A stretch of DNA of 64,000 nt, from the IMG/VR virus record IMGVR_UViG_3300044712_000810, positions 1 through 64,000 of that record; one strand, 5' to 3'. The number at the start of each line of letters is the position of its first letter. Positions within the stretch are counted from its first letter, which is position 1. The position numbers and the translations under genes are program-made. A model generated the notes under the pieces. That model saw nothing but the letters and a program-made list of their open reading frames with translations, was not told the origin of the DNA and searched no databases. This document shows, one piece after another, positions 31,748 through 58,473 of this stretch.

Positions 31748-32530
31748 ATGGCTGATACAGAGCTGTCAAAGTACCTGGACGTTAGTCATCCACTCATGGA
31801 GCTTTTCAAAAAGACTGCTCCGGGTACACAGAAGCATTGTCTTAACGTGGCCGCTTTTTGCGAAAGTATCGCAAGAGATTTGAATTTAAAAAATCCAGAT
31901 ATGTTAAAGTGTGCAGCACTGTATCATGATATCGGTAAAACCGTCAATCCGATGTATTTTACCGAAAATCAATCCGGTGTTAATCCACATGATGATATTA
32001 AGAATCCACATTTAAGTTTTCAATTGATATCGCGACATATCCCAGATACTGTATTCATATTACATCAATACAAATTTCCAATAGAAATTATTGATATAGC
32101 CAGTGAACACCACGGTGATTCTGTCTTATCATACTTCTATAATATTGCAAAGAAACAACAGTCAAACGATTTACATCCAACAGAATTGATTAAACAATTC
32201 AGATATAGATCGCCGCGTCCAAAAACTGCGGAAAGTGCAATACTCATGATTTGTGATCGTGTGGAAGCAACCGCTAGAAGCAAATTCATGAATGCACCAA
32301 AAGATGTTCAAGTCGATTTTGCAGAGTTTGTTCATGGAATCATCAACGAACTTAAAGAAGATGGTCAATTAGACAATATGAAGATTGGTACTTGTCGCAA
32401 AGTTGAAATAATACTTTCGCGTGAACTTGCATCAATCTATCATAGTCGAATTGCATATCCGGCTGAACCGGAAGATGAAGATGACCAAACAATTGGTGAA
32501 ACAAGACCCAAAGACGTGACAGACGCGTAG
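31748..32530 (+). CDS. Stand-alone HD (HDIG) phosphodiesterase domain, PgpH/7TM-HD-like
   Basis: APGTQKH, YHDIGK...YFTENQ...NPHD, EHHG, FRY.SPRPKTAESAILMICDRVEATARS as in PgpH-type cytoplasmic HD domains. Confidence 0.8.
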   Translation: MADTELSKYLDVSHPLMELFKKTAPGTQKHCLNVAAFCESIARDLNLKNPDMLKCAALYHDIGKTVNPMYFTENQSGVNPHDDIKNPHLSFQLISRHIPDTVFILHQYKFPIEIIDIASEHHGDSVLSYFYNIAKKQQSNDLHPTELIKQFRYRSPRPKTAESAILMICDRVEATARSKFMNAPKDVQVDFAEFVHGIINELKEDGQLDNMKIGTCRKVEIILSRELASIYHSRIAYPAEPEDEDDQTIGETRPKDVTDA

Positions 32531-32575: not shown

Positions 32576-32764
32576 ATGCTAATTACAATTTTAACTGGAA
32601 TCGCAACATTTCTATGGGCATTCTGTGGTGGAATGGGTCTAGCAATAGAAGAAATTGCATTTAAACGAAATATAAGATTAATCGATTATGTTGGTGCATA
32701 TATATGTGGACCGATAGCCCTACTAATAACAGTATTAAGATTGAGAGATAAATACAATGGATGA
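32576..32764 (+). CDS. Small membrane hypothetical protein
   Basis: AAGGAG RBS, two hydrophobic segments. Confidence 0.6.
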   Translation: MLITILTGIATFLWAFCGGMGLAIEEIAFKRNIRLIDYVGAYICGPIALLITVLRLRDKYNG

Positions 32765-33059
32765 ATTAGAAATAGAACAAATAAATGAACAAAAAGAAGA
32801 TCTACAAGAACCACCAAGATTCAAAGTAATATTCTTTAACGATGACTTTACAACAACTGATTTTGTAACTGACGTTGTTCAAAGTGTTTTCAAAAGAACA
32901 ATCGAAGAAGCAGAAAGAATAACAAATGTTATTCATACAACAGGTCATGCAGTTGTCGGAACATATACAAAAGAAATAGCTGAAACAAAAAGAGCACAAG
33001 TAATAAACAAAGCAAGAGCACAGGAGTTCCCGCTTCGGGTTGAATGTGAACTAGATTAA
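32757..33059 (+). CDS. clpS: ATP-dependent Clp protease adaptor
   Basis: EPPRFKVIFFNDDFTTTDFV, IHTTGHAVVGTYTKEIAETK, FPLRVECE. Confidence 0.92.
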   Translation: MDELEIEQINEQKEDLQEPPRFKVIFFNDDFTTTDFVTDVVQSVFKRTIEEAERITNVIHTTGHAVVGTYTKEIAETKRAQVINKARAQEFPLRVECELD

Positions 33060-33072
33060 ATGAGGATATTCT

Positions 33073-33963
33073 ATGCTTAATGATGGATTTTATAAAAAAG
33101 TTGAAGATCCAAAATATTTAAAAAACATACTTTACGGCGATACAGACTCTTTGTTCCTTTGTATCCCAACTAAAACATCAGCAAAACAAATGTCAATTGA
33201 CGAAATTATTAAAATTTCAAAAGATACTGGTAAGAATATAAATGATTTAATTCAACAGTATATGGTTAAATATTTGTTTCCAAAAGCAAATATTGATCCT
33301 AATTTTAATAAGACTCAATTTAAAAACGAAATGATTATGTCGAGTATCATGTTCCTCGACGTTAAAAAACAGTATGCATATAAACTACTAGTAAAAGAAG
33401 GTGTTGTACTAACAGAACCTGAAACCAAATATACCGGTATTCAGATTGTTAGAACCAATACTGCAAAAATTACTAGTAAACTTTTAAGAGAAATGATTGA
33501 GGATGTTATTCTTAATCCACAAATTACAAGAAAACAACGTATTCCAAAACTTATTGAACTCGTTGATGCAAAACACAAAGTATTTAATGATTTTGCAGAC
33601 GCATGTGATTTTACCGAAATAGGTATTCCATGTAAATGGCAAAAACAAGATCAACATATTATGGGAATGAAATTATATAATTTCATAATGGAGAAAGAGA
33701 CATTTAACTTAGGATCTTCCGGAAGATTCATCTATTGCAAATTTCATGATACTAGAACATTAAATCTTTCCGGTATAGATACTGATAAATTAAACGGTAT
33801 AGTCGTACCATATTCATATGATAAAGATAAACTTCGTGATGCAATGGCTAAATATAAAATCATCATCGATAGACAAACACAATGGGACACACTGTACTCC
33901 AAGACTTGTCAACGCTTAACTGAACTAGTAAAACTGATCGATAAGAGATCAGAAGGGAAGTAA
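33073..33963 (+). CDS. Family-B DNA polymerase, C-terminal part (palm motif C + thumb)
   Basis: ILYGDTDSLF, KKQYAY, KYTGIQIVRTNT. Confidence 0.9.
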   Translation: MLNDGFYKKVEDPKYLKNILYGDTDSLFLCIPTKTSAKQMSIDEIIKISKDTGKNINDLIQQYMVKYLFPKANIDPNFNKTQFKNEMIMSSIMFLDVKKQYAYKLLVKEGVVLTEPETKYTGIQIVRTNTAKITSKLLREMIEDVILNPQITRKQRIPKLIELVDAKHKVFNDFADACDFTEIGIPCKWQKQDQHIMGMKLYNFIMEKETFNLGSSGRFIYCKFHDTRTLNLSGIDTDKLNGIVVPYSYDKDKLRDAMAKYKIIIDRQTQWDTLYSKTCQRLTELVKLIDKRSEGK

Positions 33964-34906: not shown

Positions 34907-34927
34907 TACCAATTTTTTAATTTGATT

Positions 34928-35410
34928 ATGAACACATACATTATAGCAGATACACATTTTGGACATGCCAACATTATCAAATACTGTAATAGACCATTTA
35001 CCGATTTTATCGAAATGGACTATATCCTAAAACGAAACTGGAATTCAACAGTAGGAATTAATGATACTGTATGGCATCTTGGCGATTTTGCAATGTTACC
35101 AAAACAAAACATTCAACAGCTTATTCCTCAGCTTAATGGTAGGAAAAAAATAGTACTCGGAAATCATGATAGATATGAGAAACAATTCTATTTAGATTCC
35201 GGATTTGAAGAAGTATATGAACACAATGAAGTATTCTTTGAGAAGTACTCAATGTCTCATCATCCTCTCCCGAATCCTACGATCCTAAATATTCACGGTC
35301 ACGTTCACAATACAAGTTTCGACTTTAAAAGTGAATTGCACGTCTGTGTATGTGTCGAACTACATGATTACAAACCGATACTACTCAACAGTATAATACC
35401 GCAAATTTAA
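34928..35410 (+). CDS. Calcineurin-like metallophosphoesterase
   Basis: ADTHFGH, HLGDF, GNHD, SHHP, HGHVH. Confidence 0.9.
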   Translation: MNTYIIADTHFGHANIIKYCNRPFTDFIEMDYILKRNWNSTVGINDTVWHLGDFAMLPKQNIQQLIPQLNGRKKIVLGNHDRYEKQFYLDSGFEEVYEHNEVFFEKYSMSHHPLPNPTILNIHGHVHNTSFDFKSELHVCVCVELHDYKPILLNSIIPQI

Positions 35411-37359: not shown

Positions 37360-38982
37360 ATGAAGAAAGTCGTAAAATCAGTGGAAAAGGCAATTTACAA
37401 AAACCCAACAGCGACAGCAGACACTGTCAACAAACACGGCACAAAAGCTTGGACTCAGTCCGATAGCACTCGTGTCGATCAGATCATGATGACAGGTACA
37501 TTTGGAAACTCGTTCTACGCCTCCGGCGACGAACTTGTGAAAGATGCTATCGAAGTCATCGAACGCGTGGCAAAGAAAGATCCTGCGCTGCTTGCATCAA
37601 CCATCGTGAAGGGTCGTAATGACGGCTTCATCAGAACTGCACCGTTAATCGGTCTAACAGTTCTATCGATGCACGCTCCAGCTGAATTTCGTAAAATCTT
37701 CAACGATACCGTGAAAACCGGTAACGACCTTGAAGACTTCATGAAGTTCGCATCAACCATGCGTAAAGGATTCGGAACTGCAATCAAGAAAGCTATGTGG
37801 GGATGGCTGTTTGAAAAGGTAACACCTTTCTACGCAACCAAATACACAAAGCAAATCGCGAACGCAATTTCCGTTTCGCATCCAAGAACACTCGATCCTA
37901 TCTTCGATTACATCATGCAGCACACTGCTGGTAAATCGAGAAACTATGCGGCTGCTCTCAAAAAGTATCCTGCCCTTCGTGGTATGGAAGAAGCAAAGGT
38001 AGCAGTTCAAAACAAAGACTGGAAGAAAGCCCAGAAACTAATCGACGAGCACAGACTCGATCCGACTACTTTTCTTGGCATGGGAACAATGACAAAAGAT
38101 GTGTGGAAATCACTTTCTGCACAATTTGGTGTCATGGCATATCTCAAATACCTTAACAAGATCGTCCGCGAGGATGCTCTTGATCCTAAGGTAATGAGAG
38201 AAAAGCTAAAACCTGAAGTCCTGAACAAGGCAAAGGTTTTCCCATTCCGTCTTTACATCGCAAGAGAAAACATCCAGAACGCAACAGTTCGTGATCATCT
38301 CGCCCAAGTCCTCGACGACTACGGCAAGATTTACAACTGGGAATCTTGGGGTGACAAGCAATTTGTCATCGCACCAGACGTTTCTGGATCAATGGTTCAA
38401 GCTGTACGTGGATCTAAACTAACTCCAGCCACAGTTGCTGGTATGTTCAGTGGATTCCTGTACAAATTCATTCCAGGAAGTATTCTTCTTCCTTGGAGCA
38501 CTGAAGTTCGTCCGAACCTCGTGCGTCCTCGTCAGGACTCTGTTCTGACACATATCGAAAGTATTGCCCGTGCAAACGGCGGTGGAACAGCAATGGCTTC
38601 ACCGATCGATCACATGATCCGCAATAAGATCAAGTGTGACTACTTCATCGGAATCACCGATTCTGAAGAATGGTCTGCACCTGTGACCAGATATGCTTGG
38701 GGCGGACGTAGATCCGATGAAAGACAGTGGATTGATGCTTGGACTGAATACAGAAATAAAGTCAACAAGAATGCGAAAGCAATTCTTCTTCGTGTGGATG
38801 GATACCCAACACAGCCATTCGATGACAAAACAGCTAAAGAAAATGGAATTTACCAGATCTTCGGTTGGTCCGACAACGTACTCAAATACGTTGATTACGT
38901 GATCAATTCTGAAAAATATGTGGTAAAAGAAAAAGAAAAGAAAGTTGAAAAACTTGATAAATATGTAACTATCGAAAGATAG
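37360..38982 (+). CDS. Ro60/Rsr ortholog (TROVE + C-terminal vWA)
   Basis: TGTFGNSFYA, RNDGFIRTAP, FPFRLYIA, vWA MIDAS-like APDVSGSM, GGGTAMASP, ITDSEEW. Confidence 0.9.
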   Translation: MKKVVKSVEKAIYKNPTATADTVNKHGTKAWTQSDSTRVDQIMMTGTFGNSFYASGDELVKDAIEVIERVAKKDPALLASTIVKGRNDGFIRTAPLIGLTVLSMHAPAEFRKIFNDTVKTGNDLEDFMKFASTMRKGFGTAIKKAMWGWLFEKVTPFYATKYTKQIANAISVSHPRTLDPIFDYIMQHTAGKSRNYAAALKKYPALRGMEEAKVAVQNKDWKKAQKLIDEHRLDPTTFLGMGTMTKDVWKSLSAQFGVMAYLKYLNKIVREDALDPKVMREKLKPEVLNKAKVFPFRLYIARENIQNATVRDHLAQVLDDYGKIYNWESWGDKQFVIAPDVSGSMVQAVRGSKLTPATVAGMFSGFLYKFIPGSILLPWSTEVRPNLVRPRQDSVLTHIESIARANGGGTAMASPIDHMIRNKIKCDYFIGITDSEEWSAPVTRYAWGGRRSDERQWIDAWTEYRNKVNKNAKAILLRVDGYPTQPFDDKTAKENGIYQIFGWSDNVLKYVDYVINSEKYVVKEKEKKVEKLDKYVTIER

Positions 38983-39031
38983 TTTTCAGGTGGGAGTTAT
39001 TACACTCCCACCAACTACAAATTTCTAAATT

Positions 39032-39100
39032 TGCAAGGTATCAGTAATAAGTTTCAACGCACTGTTAAAGCCAAAAAGGCTTATTACATTAGTCCTTGCG
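39032..39100 (+). ncRNA. Scaffold RNA unit 1 (Asn GUU anticodon-loop cargo)
   Basis: GCAAGG/CCTTGC closing stem; GTAATAAGTTT/AGGCTTATTAC inner stem; CAAC-GC-A-CTGTTAA-A-GC. Confidence 0.8.
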
Positions 39101-39115
39101 CTTCTTTCAAATTTT

Positions 39116-39338
39116 GGAAGGTATCAGAAAAACGTTCAACGCACATGAAATGCACCCGAGTTAACACTCGTGTAGGTTCGAGTCCTACCCTTGGCACCAA
39201 TCATGGGGACCATCTAGAGAGAAAGTCGAAAGACCGCTTCAAAAGATAGCAATTAAATTTGCAGGTACCCTCCAAATTTTGCCGAGGTGGCGGAATTGGT
39301 AGACGCAGGTAAAAACAATGTTTTTCATCAGTCCTTCC
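39116..39338 (+). ncRNA. Scaffold RNA unit 2 enclosing a circularly permuted tRNA-Leu-like body
   Basis: GGAAGG/CCTTCC; 3' half 39154-39199 (variable arm, T arm, CCTTGGC-A-CCA) precedes 5' half 39281-39310 (GCCGAGGTGGCGGAATTGGTAGACGCA). Confidence 0.85.
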
Positions 39339-39347
39339 GACTTATTT

Positions 39348-39425
39348 TGTGGAGTAGAGTAGTCTGGTCTAACTCGTAGGTCTCATAAGCCTAGTACACA
39401 GGTTCAAATCCTGTCTCCGCAACCA
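39348..39425 (+). tRNA. tRNA-Met(CAT), initiator-like sequence
   Basis: TGTGGAG/CTCCGCA, D stem GAGT/ACTC, TAGGT-CTCATAA-GCCTA, ACAGG-TTCAAAT-CCTGT, ACCA end. Confidence 0.9.
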
Positions 39426-39429
39426 CTTT

Positions 39430-39523
39430 TGAAAGGTAATCCGACAAGATTCAACGTTACCATTATACGTCTATCGGGCAACTCGACGCCCGATCGAAAC
39501 CGTCTTGTCATCTAGTCCTTTCA
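39430..39523 (+). ncRNA. Scaffold RNA unit 3
   Basis: TGAAAGG/CCTTTCA; GACAAGAT/GTCTTGTC; TTCAACG; insert hairpin ATCGGGC/GCCCGAT. Confidence 0.8.
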
Positions 39524-39529
39524 CCCTTT

Positions 39530-39592
39530 TGCAAGGTAAATGAATCTGGATTCAACGGAAAACTGAAAACACCAGATTTAACAGTCCTTGCA
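39530..39592 (+). ncRNA. Scaffold RNA unit 4 (minimal; possible Phe GAA loop CTGAAAA)
   Basis: TGCAAGG/CCTTGCA; AATCTGG/CCAGATT; TTCAACG. Confidence 0.8.
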
Positions 39593-39612
39593 CTTAAAAT
39601 TTCTCACAACTT

Positions 39613-39757
39613 TTGAGAGGTAACCCCGAGTAGGTTCAACGCTATATGGAAGCCGGTGTCATCGGTTCGAATCCGATCTCCTCCATCACAAATCTTTTGG
39701 GGGAGTAGCTCAGTCTGGTAGAGCACGAAAAACAATCTGCTCAATTAGTCCTCTCAA
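39613..39757 (+). ncRNA. Scaffold RNA unit 5 enclosing a circularly permuted tRNA-Ala-like body
   Basis: TTGAGAGG/CCTCTCAA; T arm ATCGG-TTCGAAT-CCGAT and CTCCTCC-A (39661-39685) precede GGGGGAGTAGCTCAGTCTGGTAGAGCAC (from 39699); G3:U70. Confidence 0.85.
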
Positions 39758-39771
39758 CTTTTAAAAATTTT

Positions 39772-39846
39772 GGTCTAGTAGCTTAATGGTAGAGCACCTG
39801 CCTGTCGAGCAGCAAGATGTCGGTTCAAATCCGATCTAGATCGCCA
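39772..39846 (+). tRNA. tRNA-Asp(GTC), atypical anticodon arm
   Basis: GGTCTAG/CTAGATC, loop CTGTCGA, GTCGG-TTCAAAT-CCGAT, G73 and CCA. Confidence 0.85.
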
Positions 39847-39851
39847 TCTTT

Positions 39852-39970
39852 TGCAAGGTAACCCCGTGTGGTTTCAACGGAAACTAACAAGTCATCAAAA
39901 CTGGTTACAGTAGGATTCGAAGCCTACAACACCTTCGGGTGAAACGAGCCACACAAACCATGTCCTTGCA
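39852..39970 (+). ncRNA. Scaffold RNA unit 6 (T-arm-like and UUCG hairpins)
   Basis: TGCAAGG/CCTTGCA; GTGTGGTTT/GAGCCACAC; GTAGG-ATTCGAAG-CCTAC; CACC-TTCG-GGTG. Confidence 0.8.
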
Positions 39971-39981
39971 CTTAAAATTTT

Positions 39982-40067
39982 GGGGATGTTACACAAGCGG
40001 CAACGTGACCTGGCTGTAACCCAGGTGCCTTCGGGCTTCAGAGGTTCGAGTCCTCTCTTCCCCACCA
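39982..40067 (+). tRNA. tRNA-Tyr(GTA)
   Basis: GGGGATG/CTTCCCC, CCTGG-CTGTAAC-CCAGG, long variable arm, AGAGG-TTCGAGT-CCTCT, ACCA. Confidence 0.92.
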
Positions 40068-40085
40068 TTATAATTTGGAGATATT

Positions 40086-40481
40086 ATGTTTGATTTCAAT
40101 AAATGCGACAATCCAAAAAAGCAAGGTAATATTGGAATTGGTATCGCAATCGCATGGTTCGTAAAAAATGGTTGTACCGTATCTATTCCATTAACAGATT
40201 GTCAAGAATATGATCTTGTCATCGATGATATTAATGGAAAATTATACAAAGTTCAAGTTAAAACTACAACATTTAAAGAATTTAATACTTATAAAATTAA
40301 CTTAAAAACCTGTGGTGGCAATCAAAGTTTTAATACAATTAAAAAATTCGATAAAACGAAAGTAGATTTATTATTCATTGTTACCTGTGAAGGTGATATG
40401 TATTTAATTCCAACAAATAAAATAACACAAACAAATTGTTTAAAACTTGGTGAAAAATATCAAGACTGTAAAGTTACTTAA
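40086..40481 (+). CDS. Free-standing PD-(D/E)XK endonuclease (I-Ssp6803I/PDDEXK_5-like)
   Basis: KQGNIG...VSIPL.D...YDLVID...LYKVQVKT...KVDLLFI. Confidence 0.8.
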   Translation: MFDFNKCDNPKKQGNIGIGIAIAWFVKNGCTVSIPLTDCQEYDLVIDDINGKLYKVQVKTTTFKEFNTYKINLKTCGGNQSFNTIKKFDKTKVDLLFIVTCEGDMYLIPTNKITQTNCLKLGEKYQDCKVT

Positions 40482-40494
40482 AATTTCCACTTAT

Positions 40495-40577
40495 TTGAAG
40501 GGTAAACCGACAAGTTTCAACGCTCATAACGTATTCGCGCCATCTTGCGAATCTAACTTGTCACGCAGTCCCTTCAA
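40495..40577 (+). ncRNA. Scaffold RNA unit 7 (Met CAU anticodon-loop cargo)
   Basis: TTGAAGGG/CCCTTCAA; GACAAGTT/AACTTGTC; CAAC-G-CTCATAA-C. Confidence 0.8.
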
Positions 40578-40583
40578 CTTTTT

Positions 40584-40654
40584 TGTGAGGTATCAGTAAT
40601 AAGTTTCAACGCCCCTTGCACGAGCCTAAAACGCTTATTACACAAGTCCTCACA
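40584..40654 (+). ncRNA. Scaffold RNA unit 8 (Ala UGC anticodon-loop cargo)
   Basis: TGTGAGG/CCTCACA; same inner stem as unit 1; GCCC-CTTGCAC-GAGC. Confidence 0.8.
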
Positions 40655-40671
40655 TTTAAATTTCCAAATTT

Positions 40672-40805
40672 TGGAAGGTATCAAGAAACATCCAACGTTA
40701 ACTCCAAACCGGGGGTTATGGTTCAAGTCCATACATTTTGCCAAATAAGGCAGTGTAATGTAATGTAGCATACCGGTTCAACGCAGTTTCTTAAAAGTCC
40801 TTCCA
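40672..40805 (+). ncRNA. Scaffold RNA unit 9 enclosing a permuted tRNA-Trp-like body
   Basis: TGGAAGG/CCTTCCA; CTCCAAA-CCGG, T arm TATGG-TTCAAGT-CCATA, closed acceptor hairpin, then D arm ATGT/GCAT and CCGGT. Confidence 0.75.
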
Positions 40806-40812
40806 CATTTTT

Positions 40813-40880
40813 TGCGAGGTATTCTTCCAGGATTCAACGATCCTCTAAATCGAAAACGACCCTGGATATCAGTCCTCGCG
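40813..40880 (+). ncRNA. Scaffold RNA unit 10 (CGAT-CCTCTAA-ATCG stem-loop, Arg UCU-like)
   Basis: TGCGAGG/CCTCGCG; TCCAGG/CCTGGA; TTCAACG. Confidence 0.8.
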
Positions 40881-40900
40881 ACTTTTTTAAGGAGAACCAC

Positions 40901-41077
40901 ATGTGTAAAGATGAATGCACTTGCGAAGTCAAGTGTCCAATCTGTCAAGAATTGATAGATAAACATGGTGGATTATATCCAAACCAAGAAACAATCAAAG
41001 CCATCGAAGAAGTTCGAAACGGCAAAACAAAAACATTTAATTCAGTTGAAGAGTTATTTAACGAATTACACAAATAA
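40901..41077 (+). CDS. 58-aa protein: Cys-rich N-terminus plus DinJ/RelB-type C-terminal toxin-binding segment (not in ORF track)
   Basis: AAGGAG RBS; hand translation MCKDECTCEVKCPICQELIDKHGGLYPNQETIKAIEEVRNGKTKTFNSVEELFNELHK; followed by terminator CGGGTC-TTCG-GACCC. Confidence 0.75.
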   Translation: MCKDECTCEVKCPICQELIDKHGGLYPNQETIKAIEEVRNGKTKTFNSVEELFNELHK

Positions 41078-42511: not shown

Positions 42512-42525
42512 ACTTGGAGTCAACC

Positions 42526-43629
42526 ATGTCGTGTCTGGATAAATGCGCATTTCTTATTCCATATACTCAAATAGAGGCAGGTGCACAAACACAATTGTGC
42601 AACTATTTAAAAGAACCATTTTGCCTCCGCGCAGCTGTAATGCCAGACATCCATACCGGATATGCGTTACCAGTTGGTGCGGTTGTATTGCTCGAAGGAG
42701 TAATATCACCAGCAGCAGTTGGTGTTGATATAGGTTGCGGAATGTGTTGTATTCGTACAGATGTTCCGATCAAACATATCAAAGGAAAAGAAGAAAAACT
42801 ATTTAAACAAATATATTCTACTATTCCAGTTGGATTTGGTAGTCATGCAAAAAAAAGAGACTATCCTGATTTCAAATCAGCAATACTGGATAAAAAACTG
42901 GATGCAGCAATAAATTTAAAATTAAAAGAACAACTTGGAACTCTCGGTGGTGGGAATCACTTTATTGAAATTGGTGAAACACGAGAAGGAAATATAGGAA
43001 TTACTATTCATAGTGGATCACGTAATGCTGGAAAGCAAATATGTGATCATTACTGTGCATTAGCTAAAAAAATTCATACTGAATTAAAAGGTGACTTTCT
43101 ATTCTTCGATCGTGATGAAGGAAAGGCATACTTTCAAGATATGAACTTTATGTTATCATATGCATTAGAAAATCGTTTAAATATGATGGTTGACATTCTT
43201 GATATACTTGGGTTGGATCAAAATCTACTCAAGGAAATCATTAATGAGAATCATAATCATGCCGAAGATCTAGATGGAAAGATTCTGCATCGTAAAGGTG
43301 CAACACCAGCAGCAAAAGACCAATTGGGTGTTATCCCAGGTAATATGCGCGACGGTGTATATATAACTAAAGGTCTTGGCAACGACAAATATCTGTCAAG
43401 TGCAAGTCATGGAGCCGGTCGTAAAGGTTCTAGAACTTGGGCAAAACAAAAAGATACAGTCGAAACATTTGCAAAACTAATGAATGGTATTGTCGCGAAA
43501 GTTGACAAACATACATTGGATGAAGCACCTTGGGCATATAAAAAGATCGAGGATGTAATTAAAGCACAAGAAGGAATTGTGGTTGATATTATCGATCACA
43601 TTAGACCAATCATTAACATCAAAGGATAG
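42526..43629 (+). CDS. rtcB: RtcB 2',3'-cyclic-phosphate/5'-OH RNA ligase
   Basis: MPDIHTG, VGVDIGCG, LGTLGGGNHFIE, IHSGSR, NENHNH, HRKGATP, SASHGAGR, DEAPWAYK. Confidence 0.95.
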   Translation: MSCLDKCAFLIPYTQIEAGAQTQLCNYLKEPFCLRAAVMPDIHTGYALPVGAVVLLEGVISPAAVGVDIGCGMCCIRTDVPIKHIKGKEEKLFKQIYSTIPVGFGSHAKKRDYPDFKSAILDKKLDAAINLKLKEQLGTLGGGNHFIEIGETREGNIGITIHSGSRNAGKQICDHYCALAKKIHTELKGDFLFFDRDEGKAYFQDMNFMLSYALENRLNMMVDILDILGLDQNLLKEIINENHNHAEDLDGKILHRKGATPAAKDQLGVIPGNMRDGVYITKGLGNDKYLSSASHGAGRKGSRTWAKQKDTVETFAKLMNGIVAKVDKHTLDEAPWAYKKIEDVIKAQEGIVVDIIDHIRPIINIKG

Positions 43630-47468: not shown

Positions 47469-47578
47469 CAAAAATTAAAGTGGGGGATGGCTTACGTCCC
47501 CCACGCAATTTGATTTCCCTTCTAAAGTTATAAAGAAATAGTTTTATAGTATAAAATCCTTGGGAATTGGGGGTAAGA

Positions 47579-49681
47579 GTGCAACAAATCCAATGTGACG
47601 ATTTAATTGACATGATTAAGTCCGACAAAATTTCTCCCTATCAATTTTATTCTACGGATATTGATTATCCACAGTATTACAGTGTTGAATATTTTTTAAA
47701 TCATCCTCATGATACTATTGAAAAAAATCAAAAGCTTAAAATCCTGTTTTTAGACATCGAAGTTTATATGCAAGGATCTACGAAATTCCCAAAACCAGAA
47801 GAAGGGGAATTTCCAGTAAGCGCAATTACAACATATTTAAATACAAAAAACAAGTTTACATCTTATTTTTTATTATTGAATAAAAACATACAAAAATTTC
47901 CAGTAGAAGATCTTGAAAAACAAAAACAAGATTATTTAAACACACTGTTACAAAATAAATATATAACAGACAAAGATACACTGGAAATTAAAATTTTTAC
48001 GAATGAAACAGAACTGTTAAAAACATTTTGGGAAGATGTAAAAACAGATGATCCAGCATGTTTAACAGGATGGAACAGCGATCAATTCGACTTACCGTAT
48101 CTATATTACAGAACGGTTAATGTATTAAATGGTGATGAAAAACGTGCTCATAAGTTAATGTCTAAATTTGGACAAGTTAAAGTTAGAGCATATGGTGGAA
48201 AAATAGTAATAGATTTTCCAGAATTTATTAATATGGATTTATATTACTTATATAAACCACGAGCAGAAGGTGGACTTGCACAAGGTAAAACTATGGCAAG
48301 TTATTCACTAGATTTCGTGTCAGAACAAATTTTAAAATTAAAGAAATTAGAATATAAAAATGAAGGTATGAGTCTGGATATGTTTTATGAAGCAGATCCA
48401 GTTGGATACTTATTATATAACATAATGGACTGTTGCCTAGTTAATTTACTTAACAATAAACTAGGACACCCAGACCGATATAACATGTTACGTCGTCTTA
48501 TGAAGACACCATTAGGTATTGCACTAAGAGGTCCTTCCGCATTATTTGATACATTCGTTTTACATGAATTGACAAGAAATGGTCAGGGCCCAAGATTTGG
48601 AATACTAGACGAAACAAGTGTAGAAATTCCAGAACATGAGATTAGACAAATACCTACACAAAAAACAAGTAAGAAAATTAAATGGGGAATTACTGAAATT
48701 TCCCAAGAAACTTATAGAGCGATAACTTGTAGATATCCTGGCGCATATGTTAAGGATTCTCCAGGTTTAATTTATGACTTGGATGATGGAATTCTAATTG
48801 ACTTAGATGCAACATCACTGTATCCAAGTATGATCTGTCAATATAATATCAGTTTCGATACATTCCATGGAAGAGTAATTGATCCTATTGTAACTAAATC
48901 ATTAGTAACAATTGATAATATTATTAAATCAAATGGACCAATTGCAGATAATATCTATATTGGTCTTTGTGACATGGCATCAAAATATGTATATAGAGAA
49001 GAATTTACAAATAAAAACGATTATACACAACAAGTGTATTATATCACATGTTATCTTATTAAGAAAATAAAAGAACATGGAAAAGAACTTGATAAGTTAT
49101 TTCATCCAAAAGACTATAAAGATTATATCGTACTTAAACGTTACTTGTTACCACTTATTGACTTACTTGAAGACTTATCATCAAACTCTGAAGAATATAA
49201 TACATTCGCCCATGACTATTTATTAATGGACAAAACTGATCCAGAAGTAAAAAGTTTATTAATAGTTGAAAATATAACGAAACCAACAATATGTGTTAAT
49301 CGTATTTTGGTCGAAGATTTTCCAAATTATCTAAAACAACAAAAACTAGTATTTACTCTAACCGGATGTTTATTCAATGAACACAATGACAAAATAAGTA
49401 TCTTTTATGAATTCCTTACAAACATGAAAAATATGCGCGATCAATATAAAAGAGATCGCGACAGTAATGAAGAAGGAAGCGAAAAGTATCGTTATTTTGA
49501 CATGATGCAGAATGCCACCAAAGTAACAATGAACTCAACATATGGTCTATATGGCATGAGTTTATTCAGATATAGTAATAAATGGTTGGCGAAAACTATT
49601 ACAATTTCCGGAAGATTAACACTAAAACTAGCACAAAGATTATCTGATGTATATATAAGTTCTCTCAAGGAAAATAATTAA
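47579..49681 (+). CDS. Family-B DNA polymerase, N-terminal part (3'-5' exonuclease, motifs A and B)
   Basis: FLDIEV (ExoI), GWNSDQFDLPYL (ExoII), YNIMD (ExoIII), DLDATSLYPS, KVTMNSTYG; lacks YGDTDS. Confidence 0.9.
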   Translation: MQQIQCDDLIDMIKSDKISPYQFYSTDIDYPQYYSVEYFLNHPHDTIEKNQKLKILFLDIEVYMQGSTKFPKPEEGEFPVSAITTYLNTKNKFTSYFLLLNKNIQKFPVEDLEKQKQDYLNTLLQNKYITDKDTLEIKIFTNETELLKTFWEDVKTDDPACLTGWNSDQFDLPYLYYRTVNVLNGDEKRAHKLMSKFGQVKVRAYGGKIVIDFPEFINMDLYYLYKPRAEGGLAQGKTMASYSLDFVSEQILKLKKLEYKNEGMSLDMFYEADPVGYLLYNIMDCCLVNLLNNKLGHPDRYNMLRRLMKTPLGIALRGPSALFDTFVLHELTRNGQGPRFGILDETSVEIPEHEIRQIPTQKTSKKIKWGITEISQETYRAITCRYPGAYVKDSPGLIYDLDDGILIDLDATSLYPSMICQYNISFDTFHGRVIDPIVTKSLVTIDNIIKSNGPIADNIYIGLCDMASKYVYREEFTNKNDYTQQVYYITCYLIKKIKEHGKELDKLFHPKDYKDYIVLKRYLLPLIDLLEDLSSNSEEYNTFAHDYLLMDKTDPEVKSLLIVENITKPTICVNRILVEDFPNYLKQQKLVFTLTGCLFNEHNDKISIFYEFLTNMKNMRDQYKRDRDSNEEGSEKYRYFDMMQNATKVTMNSTYGLYGMSLFRYSNKWLAKTITISGRLTLKLAQRLSDVYISSLKENN

Positions 49682-56472: not shown

Positions 56473-58473
56473 TTAGTGGACGATGATAAATACGTTAATG
56501 CGTTCGATGGCTCTGATTGGTGTAATGTCAATGTATACGTTTAATTCAGAACGAACATCATCGAACTTAACGTTTGTTGTAAATGATTTAAGTACAGAAT
56601 ATCTTTCAAGAGCAGGGTTTTCAAGGAATGCTGCAAGGAAGTTATCAACACGGAATTTAGCTTGATTGATCCAGTATTGTGTTGCCTTTCTTTGTAAGAT
56701 ATCTTTAAGTAATGTTGGAATTACTTTACGAATATAAGCAACGAATTTAGCAACGTGAGCACGTTTCAGAATAGACAGACGTTTCCATGTTGTAAGTTGT
56801 GTAAGGAAGTATTTACCTTGTGGTTCAACGATTGTGAAGTTAAGTTCACGATCTTGTAAATCACCACGTTCTGTATGGTTCGCACGATATGCGAGTTCAA
56901 TTGGCTCTTGAATTGCACCTTTTTCGATACCTGCAACTGGTTCAGCAATAAAGTATGCGCCGTCACAATATAAGTGTCTTTCAATAGCATGATAGATAGG
57001 AGTCATGTAAATGTATTCACCAGTGTAAATATCGAAAATCTTTCTATATTGAACATATAACATAGATGTCCAAACGTTCCAATCGTACTCATTTAAACGA
57101 GCATCAAGGTCTTGTTTGTATTTCTTGTGCATTGGATAAATGTCACCAAGATGAATACAATCTTGACGATAGTCAGCTAATGCTCTAGCTGAATTTTGTA
57201 CTGCTGGTGGGAAACCACCGGATACAATATAGTCTGGTTCATACCATGGGTATACGGCTTCACCAAGCTGTTCGATAGAACCGTCAATACTTGTACCATC
57301 AGAATATGGACCAACACCTTGATATGCTTGTGCAACAAGTTTAAATACAGTATCACTTGGAGCATATGTACCAGAACCTGACATATAAAGTCCAGTACCA
57401 TCGGTACCATTTTCAAGTTGTACTCCACCTTTAGCAACGTTGTTTGTTCCTAATGGAGAAACTGTACTAAGGGCAAGCATAACTTGTAAACGACGATCTT
57501 CGGCATCTGTACTTGTAATAAGTTCATCAGCCGCAGCAGCGGACTTACAACGCATAAGTTCTGATTCTTCATTAATAACATCTTCGATATAAAGAATACG
57601 TCCAGAACTAATGTCACGAATGACTTCGTTCTTTGGTGTTCTACGAATTAATGATACTTCCCATGGACCTTCAACTAATGATTCAGTTCCATCATCATTG
57701 ATTTGGGAAACCCAAATATCCATGAAACAGTACTTATAAAGGACTTCACCTTTGTCATCTGTAAACATTCTTTCAAGTTGAGTGTTACGAACACCCTTAA
57801 CTTTAAGTCTGTTATAATATGCACCAGCACCATTTGCATAGAAATAGTAAACAACGTTTTGTTCAATTTCTGGCAAATCTTGATCTGGTTGATCGATATG
57901 TAATCCCCATGGTAATGCTTGATAAGGAACTACTTTGTTAATTGGTGAAGTTGTTGATGGATTAGTATATTTACGATCAAGAGTAAGTATATAACCTGAA
58001 GTATCATCCTTTGAAACTACTTGGACTGCTTCTGCCATACTTACAGTTGGTGGGTAAATCCAATCACCAATGTCAACTGCACTATAACCGTTAAAAGTTT
58101 GACAATTCACGGTGTTACTATTTTGTGTGAAAATGAAATCTTCTGTAACTGTTTGGAAGTTTGTATTCTTTTGAATTGCGGTATTAGCTAAATAAGAGTC
58201 TTCTGGAGTAATACGAATAGCAAGAACTTTTCCAGTATATTCTAACGCTTTGTCCAAACAATAATGTGAAGGACTTGTACGTCTATAGTTTGGTTTACCA
58301 AACAGTTTTTGGAATTGTGCTCTTGAATTTACTTGAACGACTCTATTATGTGGACCTCTATCGCAAAGAATAACACCAAAAACAGTACGACCGATTTCTA
58401 AAGTAGGAGCAACATAAGAAGCATCTTCAATAGTAACATATACTGCCGGTTCTCTTCTATCTGTTACTGGCAT
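56473..58473 (-). CDS. Contractile tail sheath protein
   Basis: EPAVYVTIED N-terminus, FQKLFGKP, APVAGIEKG-like segment, ELNFTIVE, IDITPIRAIERINVFI C-terminus. Confidence 0.85.
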   Translation of the reverse strand: MPVTDRREPAVYVTIEDASYVAPTLEIGRTVFGVILCDRGPHNRVVQVNSRAQFQKLFGKPNYRRTSPSHYCLDKALEYTGKVLAIRITPEDSYLANTAIQKNTNFQTVTEDFIFTQNSNTVNCQTFNGYSAVDIGDWIYPPTVSMAEAVQVVSKDDTSGYILTLDRKYTNPSTTSPINKVVPYQALPWGLHIDQPDQDLPEIEQNVVYYFYANGAGAYYNRLKVKGVRNTQLERMFTDDKGEVLYKYCFMDIWVSQINDDGTESLVEGPWEVSLIRRTPKNEVIRDISSGRILYIEDVINEESELMRCKSAAAADELITSTDAEDRRLQVMLALSTVSPLGTNNVAKGGVQLENGTDGTGLYMSGSGTYAPSDTVFKLVAQAYQGVGPYSDGTSIDGSIEQLGEAVYPWYEPDYIVSGGFPPAVQNSARALADYRQDCIHLGDIYPMHKKYKQDLDARLNEYDWNVWTSMLYVQYRKIFDIYTGEYIYMTPIYHAIERHLYCDGAYFIAEPVAGIEKGAIQEPIELAYRANHTERGDLQDRELNFTIVEPQGKYFLTQLTTWKRLSILKRAHVAKFVAYIRKVIPTLLKDILQRKATQYWINQAKFRVDNFLAAFLENPALERYSVLKSFTTNVKFDDVRSELNVYIDITPIRAIERINVFIIVH

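What the first reader, a model, noticed from the sequence alone, without database searches (positions are those of the whole stretch)
39613..39757. Permuted tRNA-Ala body retaining the G3:U70 identity pair in scaffold unit 5
Seen: acceptor GGGGGAG/CTCCTCC gives G1-C72, G2-C71, G3:U70 and A73, followed by TCA rather than CCA. D and T arms are intact (GCTC/GAGC with GG; ATCGG-TTCGAAT-CCGAT), and a 13-nt loop links the ends. Known: G3:U70 with A73 is the AlaRS determinant and is anticodon-independent, as in tmRNA. Inference: both well-preserved permuted bodies (Leu, Ala) belong to synthetases that do not need the anticodon, which suggests selection for aminoacylation or synthetase binding rather than random capture.
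Basis: partly seen in the sequence, partly recalled or inferred. Interest (0 to 1): 0.8.

Follow-up and report, generated by a model that had tools for sequence, protein, structure and literature searches.

The report
Phage Y RNA with alanine-type tRNA mimic
The flagged stretch is one of ten small structured RNA genes next to a phage Ro60 protein gene; it carries a rearranged tRNA look-alike, a known kind of RNA, but here with the exact end that the alanine-charging enzyme recognises, which makes the old question of whether such RNAs are charged directly testable.

Summary
The element at 39615-39755 (+) is not a captured tRNA-Ala. It is the fifth of ten tandem Y-RNA-like genes lying between a Ro60/Rsr gene (37360-38982) and an RtcB RNA ligase gene (42514-43629) on a 315-kb jumbo-phage contig. 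Its two ends pair into a strongly covarying stem with an invariant UUCAACG motif, the presumed Rsr-binding module. Its core is a circularly permuted tRNA-like module of the YrlA type (Chen et al. 2014). The scaffold is a new variant: it is absent from Rfam, and 74 copies lie beside the same Rsr clade, all on the Rsr strand. The tRNA body is generic and closest to phage tRNA-Phe. Only G1-C72, G2-C71, G3:U70 and A73 are alanine-like. Those 25 bases (T arm, acceptor 3' strand, A73) are identical to the 3' end of a phage tmRNA. The same alanine set recurs in Rsr-linked modules of several phyla, and 18 of 73 modules encode N73-CCA in the closing loop. However, the same-scaffold homologues examined have G:C or C:G at 3:70, most have short closed acceptor hairpins, and no Ala/Leu/Ser bias is seen. 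Processing and charging are plausible but untested.

The parts
37360..38982 (+). Ro60/Rsr orthologue (540 aa, TROVE ring plus vWA domain)
   Evidence: Pfam vWA_Ro60 3.2e-13 and TROVE 1.6e-6. PDB sequence hits to human and Xenopus Ro60 and D. radiodurans Rsr, E 1e-14 to 1e-16.
39033..39099 (+). Y-like unit 1 (scaffold with a small hairpin insert)
   Evidence: Scaffold scan; alignment A2.
39116..39338 (+). Y-like unit 2: permuted tRNA-Leu-like module. It has a long variable arm, T arm 39172-39188, acceptor 3' strand CCTTGGC followed by A73 and CCA (39189-39199), an ~71-nt structured insert, acceptor 5' strand GCCGAGG (39271-39277), and a class II D arm.
   Evidence: The MFE fold recovers P1, P2, variable arm, T arm, acceptor and D arm, z = -2.6.
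39348..39425 (+). tRNA-Met(CAT), CCA encoded
   Evidence: ARAGORN; Rfam 59.5 bits.
39431..39522 (+). Y-like unit 3
39531..39591 (+). Y-like unit 4 (minimal unit)
39615..39755 (+). Y-like unit 5, the finding: scaffold plus a permuted tRNA-like module carrying the alanine-type acceptor
39615..39620 (+). P1 5' strand GAGAGG; pairs with 39750-39755 (CCTCTC)
   Evidence: P1 is paired in 100% of 30 aligned units, and 5 of 6 pairs show compensatory changes.
39628..39641 (+). P2 5' strand GAGTAG (pairs with CTGCTC, 39737-39742), followed by the invariant TTCAACG (39635-39641)
   Evidence: TTCAAC is invariant in alignment A2. P2 pairing was required and found in all 10 units.
39661..39677 (+). T arm (ATCGG / TTCGAAT / CCGAT)
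39678..39685 (+). Acceptor 3' strand CTCCTCC (U70 = 39682) plus discriminator A73 (39685)
   Evidence: Together with the T arm it forms a 25-mer identical to the 3' end of the tmRNA in viral contig L147.
39686..39698 (+). 13-nt loop TCACAAATCTTTT closing the acceptor; predicted site of RNase P cleavage (between 39698 and 39699) and 3' trimming
   Evidence: The loop resembles the inter-gene spacers and the U-rich leaders that precede every tRNA and unit in the array. Cleavage is inferred from M. smegmatis YrlA (PMC4201824).
39699..39724 (+). Acceptor 5' strand GGGGGAG (G3 = 39701), U8A9, and D arm GCTC/AGTCTGGTA/GAGC
   Evidence: The same 5' half occurs in phage tRNA-Phe(GAA) and in many permuted modules.
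39737..39755 (+). P2 3' strand, 3' internal loop AATTAGT, and P1 3' strand CCTCTC
39772..39846 (+). tRNA-Asp(GTC), CCA encoded
39853..39969 (+). Y-like unit 6
39982..40067 (+). tRNA-Tyr(GTA), CCA encoded
40086..40481 (+). PD-(D/E)XK endonuclease ORF interrupting the array
   Evidence: Pfam PDDEXK_5, 6e-18.
40497..40879 (+). Y-like units 7-10 (40497-40575, 40585-40653, 40673-40804, 40814-40879). Unit 9 keeps a T arm and a degenerate acceptor.
42514..43629 (+). RtcB RNA ligase
   Evidence: Pfam RtcB, 3.4e-80.

Best explanation
Window 39615-39755 (+) is a Y RNA gene, that is, a non-coding RNA partner of the Ro60/Rsr protein encoded just upstream. It is the fifth of ten tandem paralogues in a phage rsr / Y RNA + tRNA / rtcB RNA-repair locus.

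Shown:
- The 5' and 3' ends pair (P1, internal loop, P2, invariant UUCAACG) into a scaffold that covaries.
- The scaffold is found only beside this Rsr clade and only on the Rsr strand.
- The interior is a circularly permuted tRNA-like module (T arm, acceptor 3' strand, loop, acceptor 5' strand, D arm) of the YrlA type.

Inferred:
- The scaffold is the Rsr-binding handle.
- The L-shaped tRNA mimic is the effector end. It either brings tRNA-recognising proteins to the Rsr ring or serves as a decoy for them.

Further inference, about 0.3 likely: the acceptor is exactly 7 bp, has U at -1 and G at +1, has A73, and is closed by a spacer-like 13-nt loop. On that basis the loop would be opened by RNase P and the 3' end trimmed and given CCA, as shown for M. 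smegmatis YrlA. The result would be a two-piece RNA with a free acceptor end carrying the full AlaRS identity set. Whether G3:U70 is used by AlaRS is open.
For: - Rsr identity.
- RtcB downstream. This is the same gene set as the Salmonella rsr-yrlBA-rtcBA operon (PMC7790460).
- Sub-threshold but specific Rfam YrlA hit across the module.
- Ten units share the scaffold.
- P1 is paired in 100% of 30 sequences, with compensatory changes at 5 of 6 pairs; 0 of 500 shuffles reach the observed covariation score.
- 74 strict-scaffold units lie on the Rsr strand in 84 loci of the same Rsr clade. None lies on the opposite strand, none in 58 outgroup Rsr loci, and none elsewhere in the 64-kb window.
- Arrays of 2-8 units occur in relatives.
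- An independent seven-unit array with permuted tRNA-like modules lies upstream of the TROVE gene of Rhizobium phage RHph_TM30.
- Published properties of YrlA: tRNA-like D, T and acceptor arms in permuted order, encoded within 4 kb of Rsr on the same strand, present in phages (PMC4201824; 10.1101/312249).
- For processing: the 7-bp acceptor; a loop and leader like the tRNA leaders of the same array; the M. smegmatis precedent (PMC4201824); N73-CCA in 18 of 73 closing loops.
Against: - Rsr binding is not shown.
- The published Ro-binding motif GNCGAAN0-1G is absent, and the Rfam YrlA score (36.2) is below gathering (69). It is therefore not a member of that family as curated.
- No RNA data show that the units are expressed or where they are cut. 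The only RNA-labelled run is held as contigs.
- Unit 5 has UCA, not CCA, after A73.
- Most same-scaffold relatives have closed short acceptor hairpins, so an open acceptor end is not a general requirement of the family.
Confidence: 0.8

Rival explanations
1. One reading: unit 5 is selected to be a substrate or ligand of alanyl-tRNA synthetase. After RNase P cleavage, 3' trimming and CCA addition, the Y RNA is alanylated (or binds AlaRS), as the tmRNA tRNA-like domain is. This is compatible with the Y RNA identity; it is a claim about what the module does.
For: - The full acceptor identity set (G1-C72, G2-C71, G3:U70, A73) is present.
- The 25-nt T-arm/acceptor/A73 stretch is identical to the end of a phage tmRNA.
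- G:U is enriched at 3:70 relative to 2:71 and 1:72 in GGG-start modules, and is linked to A73.
- G3:U70 is kept while other acceptor pairs, T stems and loops change: L064 versus L066, L071 versus L073, L160 versus L163, and window versus L150 versus L161.
- The set is scattered over the Rsr tree.
- Herpetosiphonaceae carry the same acceptor on standard-order units with open ends.
- Established knowledge: G3:U70 transplanted into other tRNAs or into minihelices confers alanine acceptance (Hou & Schimmel 1988; McClain & Foss 1988; Francklyn & Schimmel 1989).
Against: - There are no charging or processing data.
- UCA, not CCA, follows A73.
- The same-scaffold homologues examined have G:C or C:G at 3:70, and most have closed hairpins. 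The TM30 homologue is G3-C70/U73.
- Some G3:U70 modules are closed by 3-4-nt loops (L160, L163, L168, Massilia).
- G:U is a common intermediate of compensatory change: L054 (A3:U70) and L071 (G3:U70) share the same 3' strand.
- The statistics are not phylogenetically corrected, and 15 of the 73 modules come from a search that fixed the 5' strand.
- A naive clustering removed the signal.
Confidence: 0.25
2. G3:U70 is incidental. The module derives from a generic or tRNA-Phe-like body, and the wobble is a neutral or transitional state. What is selected is only the tRNA L-shape and elbow, for modification enzymes, nuclease resistance or protein tethering, as proposed for closed-loop YrlA.
For: - The body and the whole 5' half match phage tRNA-Phe(GAA), whose acceptor differs only by C70.
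- CTCCCCC and CTCCTCC variants coexist, even within one contig (L150).
- G:U pairs also occur at 1:72 and 4:69 (10 each of 73).
- Most family members have closed acceptors (10.1101/312249).
Against: - The enrichment is position-specific and linked to A73.
- The 25-mer is identical to a tmRNA end.
- Encoded CCA is frequent in closing loops, which argues that the acceptor end matters in many lineages.
Confidence: 0.4
3. Unit 5 is the tRNA-like part of a two-piece (circularly permuted) tmRNA gene.
For: Weak Rfam hits to tmRNA_permuted (28.8 bits) and cyano_tmRNA (27.2 bits) over 39661-39707. The end is identical to that of a phage tmRNA. The gene order (T arm, acceptor 3' strand, spacer, acceptor 5' strand) matches permuted ssrA.
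Against: - ARAGORN, which searches for permuted tmRNA, finds none.
- The Rfam hits cover only the tRNA-like domain and are below gathering (47 and 70).
- Only ~30 nt follow the D arm before the scaffold closes, so there is no room for a resume codon, tag frame or pseudoknots.
- A full canonical D arm is present, which tmRNAs lack.
- The unit shares its scaffold with nine paralogues that have no tRNA part.
Confidence: 0.02
4. Unit 5 is a permuted tRNA gene that matures into a decoding tRNA through a circular intermediate (as in Cyanidioschyzon merolae), with RtcB as the ligase; or it is recombination debris in a tRNA array.
For: RtcB is encoded 2.8 kb downstream. tRNA arrays with homing endonuclease genes (PD-(D/E)XK, HNH) are prone to rearrangement.
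Against: - No anticodon stem-loop can be formed from the flanks; the position is occupied by P2/P1.
- There is no bulge-helix-bulge motif.
- All helices are intact, and the architecture recurs in dozens of loci with covariation, which debris would not show.
Confidence: 0.03

Closest known systems
YrlA-class bacterial and phage Y RNAs (Rfam RF02553; Chen et al. 2014, PMC4201824; structure in 10.1101/312249)
   Same: Encoded next to Rsr on the same strand. Modular: a terminal stem plus an internal tRNA-like domain with T arm, acceptor-like stem and D arm in permuted order. Reported in phages. In Salmonella it is linked to RtcB. M. smegmatis YrlA has a 7-bp acceptor, is cut by RNase P and receives CCA.
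   Different: - The scaffold sequence differs: RGG-UR...UUCAACG...AKU-CCY instead of GNCGAAN0-1G.
- Rfam score is 36 against a gathering score of 69.
- Ten paralogues per locus instead of two, most of them without any tRNA part.
- The acceptor carries the complete alanine identity set.
- Unit 2 is a near-complete tRNA-Leu mimic with an encoded CCA.
tmRNA tRNA-like domain, including two-piece permuted tmRNA
   Same: G1-C72, G2-C71, G3:U70, A73, and a T arm with a TTCGAAT loop. 25 nt are identical to the 3' end of the tmRNA of viral contig L147. The gene order is the same as in permuted ssrA.
   Different: No tag reading frame and no pseudoknots. A canonical D arm is present. The long-range stem is the Y scaffold rather than tmRNA helix 2. 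No CCA is encoded.
tRNA-Ala and tRNA-Phe
   Same: Acceptor identity set of tRNA-Ala. The D arm, A26-C27-G28, the GGUGUC variable loop and the GGGGGAG 5' strand match phage tRNA-Phe(GAA).
   Different: No anticodon arm, permuted order, no free ends in the primary transcript, and UCA at positions 74-76.
D. radiodurans Yrn1, and the standard-order Y/tRNA chimeras seen here in Herpetosiphonaceae
   Same: Ro60-linked RNAs in which tRNA-like arms occur in the other orientation relative to the RNA ends. L045 3211-3332 has the same GGGGGAG/CTCCTCC-A acceptor.
   Different: In those RNAs the acceptor is open and the Y-type arm is closed. In unit 5 the Y stem is open and the acceptor is closed by a loop.
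Permuted tRNA genes of Cyanidioschyzon merolae
   Same: The 3' half is encoded upstream of the 5' half, joined by a short intervening sequence at the acceptor.
   Different: Those genes keep a complete anticodon arm and mature into decoding tRNAs through a circular intermediate. Unit 5 has no anticodon arm.

Membership tests
Y RNA (Ro60/Rsr partner RNA) | Bound by Ro60/Rsr | not testable with these tools
   Indirect only. The unit lies 633 nt downstream of the Rsr stop codon on the same strand. The scaffold is confined to this Rsr clade and to the Rsr strand (74 units versus 0).
Y RNA (Ro60/Rsr partner RNA) | The 5' and 3' ends pair into a conserved stem that carries the Ro-binding site, with a variable effector module in the interior | tested here: met
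   P1 is paired in 100% of 30 sequences, with compensatory changes at 5 of 6 pairs. The interior varies from 20 to about 180 nt among the ten units.
YrlA (Rfam RF02553) | Score at or above the curated gathering threshold (69 bits) | tested here: not met
   36.2 bits, E 1.2e-5, model positions 1-114.
YrlA (Rfam RF02553) | GNCGAAN0-1G motif near the 5' end (Chen et al. 2014) | tested here: not met
   The 5' strand reads GAGAGGUAACCCCGAGUAGGUUCAACG and lacks the motif. A different invariant motif, UUCAAC, is present.
YrlA (Rfam RF02553) | Internal tRNA-like domain: T arm, acceptor-like stem-loop and D arm in that order, with tRNA spacing | tested here: met
YrlA (Rfam RF02553) | Encoded within about 4 kb of Rsr on the same strand | tested here: met
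tRNA-Ala | G3:U70 with A73 and G2:C71 | tested here: met
tRNA-Ala | Anticodon arm with an NGC anticodon; standard 5'-to-3' order; 3' CCA end | tested here: not met
   There is no anticodon arm, the order is permuted, and UCA follows A73. ARAGORN and the Rfam tRNA model do not call it.
tRNA-Ala | Body (D arm, variable loop, T arm) closest to tRNA-Ala | tested here: not met
   The best match is tRNA-Phe(GAA); Ala ranks ninth among isotypes by best score.
tmRNA (one- or two-piece) | tRNA-like domain with G3:U70 | tested here: met
   25 of 25 nt identical to the 3' end of the L147 tmRNA.
tmRNA (one- or two-piece) | Resume codon, tag reading frame and pseudoknots | tested here: not met
   ARAGORN finds no tmRNA in the window. 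Rfam tmRNA_permuted gives 28.8 bits against a gathering score of 47 and covers the tRNA-like domain only.
RNase P / CCA-adding / AlaRS substrate | Cleavage at G+1, CCA addition and alanylation | not testable with these tools
   The sequence prerequisites are present: a 7-bp acceptor plus 5-bp T stem, U at -1, G at +1, A73 and G3:U70. Only contig-level data for an RNA-labelled run could be laid.

The most novel reading that the evidence does not exclude
A subclass of Ro60-associated Y RNAs, including unit 5, are split tRNA mimics that become aminoacylated. The acceptor-closing loop is opened by RNase P, the 3' end is matured to ACCA, and AlaRS charges the RNA (LeuRS for unit 2). Ro60/Rsr would then carry an aminoacylated, anticodon-less tRNA mimic. 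Its role could be as a tmRNA-like ribosome or EF-Tu ligand, or as a decoy or sensor for host defences that attack charged tRNAs or acceptor ends. In that case the ten-unit phage array would be a panel of such baits.
Probability: 0.15. Interest if true: 0.85.

Novelty: new variant of a known kind. Interest (0 to 1): 0.55.

Why it matters
What the tRNA-like domain of bacterial Y RNAs is for has been open since 2014. Aminoacylation was raised then only as a possibility for one species.

This locus and its relatives give concrete, testable candidates:
- Y RNAs with a 7-bp acceptor.
- An alanine identity set identical to that of a tmRNA.
- Frequently an encoded CCA.

Two are in cultured phages. Rhizobium phage RHph_TM30 has a 7-unit array. 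Streptomyces phage Comrade has a G3:U70/A73 module beside its Ro-like gene.

The analysis also defines a scaffold family that Rfam lacks. It shows that Y RNA genes can form arrays of up to ten paralogues with different effector modules, interleaved with tRNAs and next to RtcB in a jumbo phage. It shows too that the same architecture exists in both circular permutations, which points to tandem duplication as the route to the permuted form.

Tried and rejected
- Rfam at gathering thresholds finds only the tRNAs in the window. Among 15 related loci, YrlA reaches gathering only in L063, so the Rfam model is too narrow for a survey.
- A single-protein scan of viral contigs found only the source contig; an alignment query was needed.
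- Clustering modules at 85% identity merged unrelated modules, because the T and D arms are nearly invariant, and erased the G3:U70 signal. I do not rely on it, but it shows that the statistics are sensitive to how independence is defined.
- My 'permuted' reading of L043/L045 (54-61-nt 'loops') was wrong. These are tandem standard-order units. G3:U70 survives in one of them under the correct reading.
- Jumbo-phage hits in Serratia phage BF and Pectobacterium phage CBB had no TROVE gene within 5 kb and were not pursued.
- Supplementary alignments of Chen et al. 2014 and the 2020 Annual Review are not held, so I could not check the M. smegmatis acceptor sequence.
- Read laying gave only Logan contigs, with no read ends, so processing sites could not be seen.
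- The tmRNA, decoding permuted tRNA and debris readings were considered and rejected (see rivals).
Full report
**1. The observation**

In 5'-to-3' order:
- T arm ATCGG/TTCGAAT/CCGAT (39661-39677).
- Acceptor 3' strand CTCCTCC (39678-39684).
- A73 (39685), then UCA.
- A 13-nt loop (39686-39698).
- Acceptor 5' strand GGGGGAG (39699-39705).
- U8A9.
- A canonical D arm GCTC/AGTCTGGTA/GAGC (39708-39724).

All seven acceptor pairs form, and G3:U70 (39701:39682) is the only wobble.

The arrangement is not a chance assembly:
- A strict scan for 'T arm, 7/7 acceptor, D arm' in permuted order finds two hits on both strands of the whole 64-kb window, and both lie in this array.
- Rfam's Y-RNA-like model YrlA aligns over 39627-39746 (36.2 bits, E 1.2e-5; gathering 69).
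- Two tmRNA models touch the T-arm/acceptor part.
- ARAGORN and the Rfam tRNA model do not call the element.
- The MFE fold recovers the two outer helices, the acceptor and the D arm (z = -2.7).

**2. The surroundings**

The ORF ending 633 nt upstream (37360-38982, 540 aa) is a Ro60/Rsr orthologue. Pfam gives vWA_Ro60 3.2e-13 and TROVE 1.6e-6. PDB sequence hits are to human and Xenopus Ro60 and to D. radiodurans Rsr.

Ten units with one scaffold follow between 39033 and 40879. They are interleaved with tRNA-Met, tRNA-Asp and tRNA-Tyr and with a PD-(D/E)XK endonuclease ORF. An HNH endonuclease gene and an RtcB RNA ligase gene (42514-43629, Pfam 3.4e-80) lie just beyond.

The gene set Rsr, Y RNAs, RtcB is that of the Salmonella rsr-yrlBA-rtcBA RNA-repair operon (PMC7790460). 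The window comes from a 314,837-bp viral contig with 34.7% G+C. Its source appears to be a rhizosphere metagenome.

**3. The scaffold**

Each unit starts with a 6-nt strand NNNRGG and ends with its complement CCYNNN (P1). Inside P1 the layout is:
- A 5' internal loop starting UA.
- A 6-8-bp helix P2.
- The invariant UUCAACG.
- The variable module.
- The P2 partner strand.
- A 3' internal loop ending AGU.

In an alignment of 30 short units from the window and from relatives, P1 is paired in 100% of cells. Five of its six pairs show compensatory changes, and 0 of 500 shuffles reach the observed covariation.

The same scaffold (RGG-UG/UA ... UUUCAAC[G/A] ... AUU/AGU-CCY) occurs beside Rsr genes of the same clade, which share 35-48% identity. 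That clade includes Lentisphaeria, Kiritimatiellae and Victivallaceae MAGs and viral and metagenome contigs. Counts:
- 74 strict units on the Rsr strand in 84 clade loci.
- 0 on the opposite strand.
- 0 in 58 loci with more distant Rsr genes.
- In the window, 9 strict units plus unit 6 (detected separately), and none outside the array.
- Arrays reach eight units in L119.

Rhizobium phage RHph_TM30 has an analogous seven-unit array with a second scaffold type (GUUGCGA ... CUUCG ... AUCUC) directly upstream of its annotated TROVE gene. None of it is annotated.

I conclude that these units are Y RNAs, that is, Rsr partner RNAs, of a scaffold variant that Rfam does not hold. Rsr binding itself is inferred, not shown.

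**4. The module**

A tRNA-like domain in exactly this permuted order is the hallmark of YrlA RNAs. These were reported near Rsr in more than 250 bacteria and 22 phages (PMC4201824), and the crystal structure shows a tRNA L-shape (10.1101/312249).

Most YrlA RNAs have closed acceptor stem-loops. M. smegmatis YrlA has a 7-bp acceptor, is cut by RNase P in vitro, and is cut and given CCA in vivo. Its authors noted that it 'could potentially be aminoacylated' (PMC4201824). I found no later test of this.

Unit 5 is therefore a new member or variant of a known kind, not a new kind.

**5. Whether the body is tRNA-Ala**

It is not, once the acceptor is set aside.
- With the acceptor strands excluded, the best match among 272 tRNAs from the fetched loci is a phage tRNA-Phe(GAA), followed by Gly, Trp and Thr. 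Ala ranks mid-field.
- That tRNA-Phe shares the whole 5' half (GGGGGAG-UA-GCUC...GAGC-A-CG) and the GGUGUC variable loop. Its acceptor differs only by C70.
- Unit 2, by contrast, is a convincing tRNA-Leu mimic. It has a class II D arm identical in type to bacterial tRNA-Leu, a long variable arm, A73 and an encoded CCA.

**6. Evidence that the alanine set is meaningful**

(a) The 25-mer 'T arm + CTCCTCC + A' occurs in only one other viral contig. There it is the 3' end of an ARAGORN-called tmRNA whose 5' end is GGGGGAG. A tmRNA must be alanylated through G3:U70 to function, so this exact minihelix is presumably an AlaRS substrate in some host.

(b) I surveyed 73 unique permuted modules with acceptors of at least 7 bp near Rsr genes or in phage tRNA arrays. 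G:U is most frequent at 3:70, with 19 cases against 2-10 at the other positions. Among the 27 modules that start GGG, U pairs with G3 in 15, but with G2 or G1 in 5 of 54 cells (p 1e-5). U70 goes with A73 in 14 of 15, against 5 of 12 for C70.

(c) The full set (G1-C72, G2-C71, G3:U70, A73) appears in several lineages, and none of these modules overlaps a called tRNA:
- Pirellula: GGGGCCG.
- Two alphaproteobacteria: GGGCCCG and GGGCCUG, both with encoded CCA.
- A Polyangiaceae contig: GGGACCG.
- Streptomyces phage Comrade.
- Several uncultured phages: GGGGGAG.

The wobble is kept while the other acceptor pairs, T stems and loops differ.

(d) On a FastTree tree of 141 Rsr proteins, the 9 Ala-type rows among 44 rows with a module need 7 state changes. 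The set is therefore not one clade's heirloom.

(e) N73-CCA is encoded in the acceptor-closing loop of 18 of 73 modules, where about 1 is expected (p 7e-17). A CCA inside a loop is useful only if the loop is opened.

(f) In this window, the unit 5 loop and the leader of the unit 2 5' half look like the U-rich leaders in front of the three tRNAs and of each unit.

**7. Evidence against a general aminoacylation or isotype-bias reading**

- The nearest DNA homologue of unit 5, in Rhizobium phage TM30 (about 80% identity over the module), has CGGAGGA/UCCUCCG, that is G3-C70, with U73-CCA.
- In arrays with the same scaffold, the modules mostly have closed acceptor hairpins of 4-7 bp with short loops. 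Those with 7 bp have G:C or C:G at 3:70 (L095 GGGGGAA/UUCCCCC; L087; L106).
- Several G3:U70 modules are closed by 3-4-nt loops (L160, L163, L168, Massilia).
- D arms of Glu/Asp type (UC-GUCU...GGAC) and discriminators G73 or U73 are about as common as Leu-type arms. I see no Ala/Leu/Ser bias.
- G:U can be a transitional state. L054 and L071 share the same 3' strand with A3 and G3 respectively.
- The statistics are not phylogenetically corrected, and 15 of the 73 modules come from a search that fixed the 5' strand. A naive clustering abolished the signal.
- No expression, cleavage or charging data exist for this element. The laid runs are contigs only.

**8. A structural side result**

In Herpetosiphonaceae (L043, L045) the same architecture exists in the other circular permutation. 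These are standard-order tRNA-like RNAs with open acceptor ends, whose anticodon arm is replaced by a closed Y-type arm. One of them has the very acceptor of unit 5 (GGGGGAG ... CUCCUCC-A, L045 3211-3332), and the units stand in tandem.

Tandem arrays of such units give an obvious route to the permuted form: the 3' half of one unit joined to the 5' half of the next. This fits the spacer-like acceptor loop of unit 5. It is an inference.

**9. Mechanism**

Most likely (0.8): unit 5 is an Rsr-bound Y RNA. Its scaffold is the protein handle. Its tRNA-shaped module is the effector end, which recruits or titrates tRNA-recognising proteins within a phage RNA-repair or anti-defence module together with RtcB. 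A competitive-inhibitor role against anticodon nucleases has been suggested for YrlA (PMC7790460).

Less certain (about 0.3): the acceptor loop is opened by RNase P and the 3' end is matured.

Least certain (about 0.15-0.25): the product is alanylated or binds AlaRS.

The tmRNA, decoding permuted tRNA and debris readings fail on tested features.

**10. Verdict**

- The element is a new variant of a known kind (tRNA-mimicking Y RNA).
- Interest is moderate. The alanine/tmRNA-type acceptor, the frequent encoded CCA and the ten-unit array are new, testable leads on an open question. The basic phenomenon has been published since 2014.

Noticed in passing
window 39597-39794: Contigs with zero differences to unit 5, its downstream spacer and the start of tRNA-Asp occur in freshwater, wastewater (library labelled RNA-seq) and soil runs. 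Partial matches occur in two more runs. The rest of 38900-40950 is not held by these runs. Either this piece is far better conserved than its neighbours, or it travels separately.
   Followed up: partly
L045 2282-3677 and L043 2505-3908: Herpetosiphonaceae Rsr loci carry tandem standard-order tRNA-like RNAs whose anticodon arm is replaced by a closed Y-type arm. This is the other circular permutation of the window's units. One element has the arm inside the D loop (L045, about 2826-2950). Rfam's tRNA model calls some of them as 122-130-nt 'tRNAs'.
   Followed up: partly
L001 3590-4740 (Rhizobium phage RHph_TM30, MN988521.1 139226-140376): An unannotated seven-unit array of a second Y-like scaffold (GUUGCGA...CUUCG...AUCUC) lies directly upstream of the annotated TROVE gene. 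It includes permuted Leu-like and generic tRNA-like modules with encoded CCA, and one non-permuted tRNA body without an acceptor.
   Followed up: partly
all fetched loci: 18 of 73 unique permuted tRNA-like modules encode N73-CCA inside the loop that closes the acceptor stem. About one is expected by chance.
   Followed up: yes
L147 4776-5201; L152 1633-2041; L169 4415-4816: Phage-encoded tmRNA genes sit in tRNA arrays. In L152 and in Gordonia phage Mareelih (L169) they lie close to a Ro-like gene.
   Followed up: no
window 33073-33963 and 47567-49681: The family B DNA polymerase appears split into two ORFs 14 kb apart. The upstream ORF matches Pfam positions 218-345. The downstream ORF holds the exonuclease domain plus positions 102-198.
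   Followed up: no
window 39200-39270: The ~71-nt insert inside the acceptor loop of unit 2 folds into its own branched hairpin. It contains a fragment (AAATTTGCAGGTA) that resembles the 5' start of a scaffold unit.
   Followed up: no
window 57729-57824 (-): ARAGORN calls a 96-nt tRNA-Thr(CGT). This is unusually long for a class I tRNA, and Rfam does not report it at gathering.
   Followed up: no
L145 6213-6334; L146 5032-5150: The 'tRNA-Pseudo' of Serratia phage BF and the 119-nt 'tRNA-Ser(AGA)' of Pectobacterium phage CBB are tRNA-like RNAs with a 69-72-nt insert where the anticodon arm should be. No TROVE gene lies within 5 kb.
   Followed up: no
window 32757-33059, 31748-32530, 34922-35410, 40901-41077: Neighbouring ORFs: a ClpS adaptor homologue (8e-28), an HD phosphohydrolase, a calcineurin-like phosphoesterase, and a 58-aa ORF with a weak RelB-antitoxin match (3e-4, below the Pfam cut-off) right after unit 10.
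   Followed up: no
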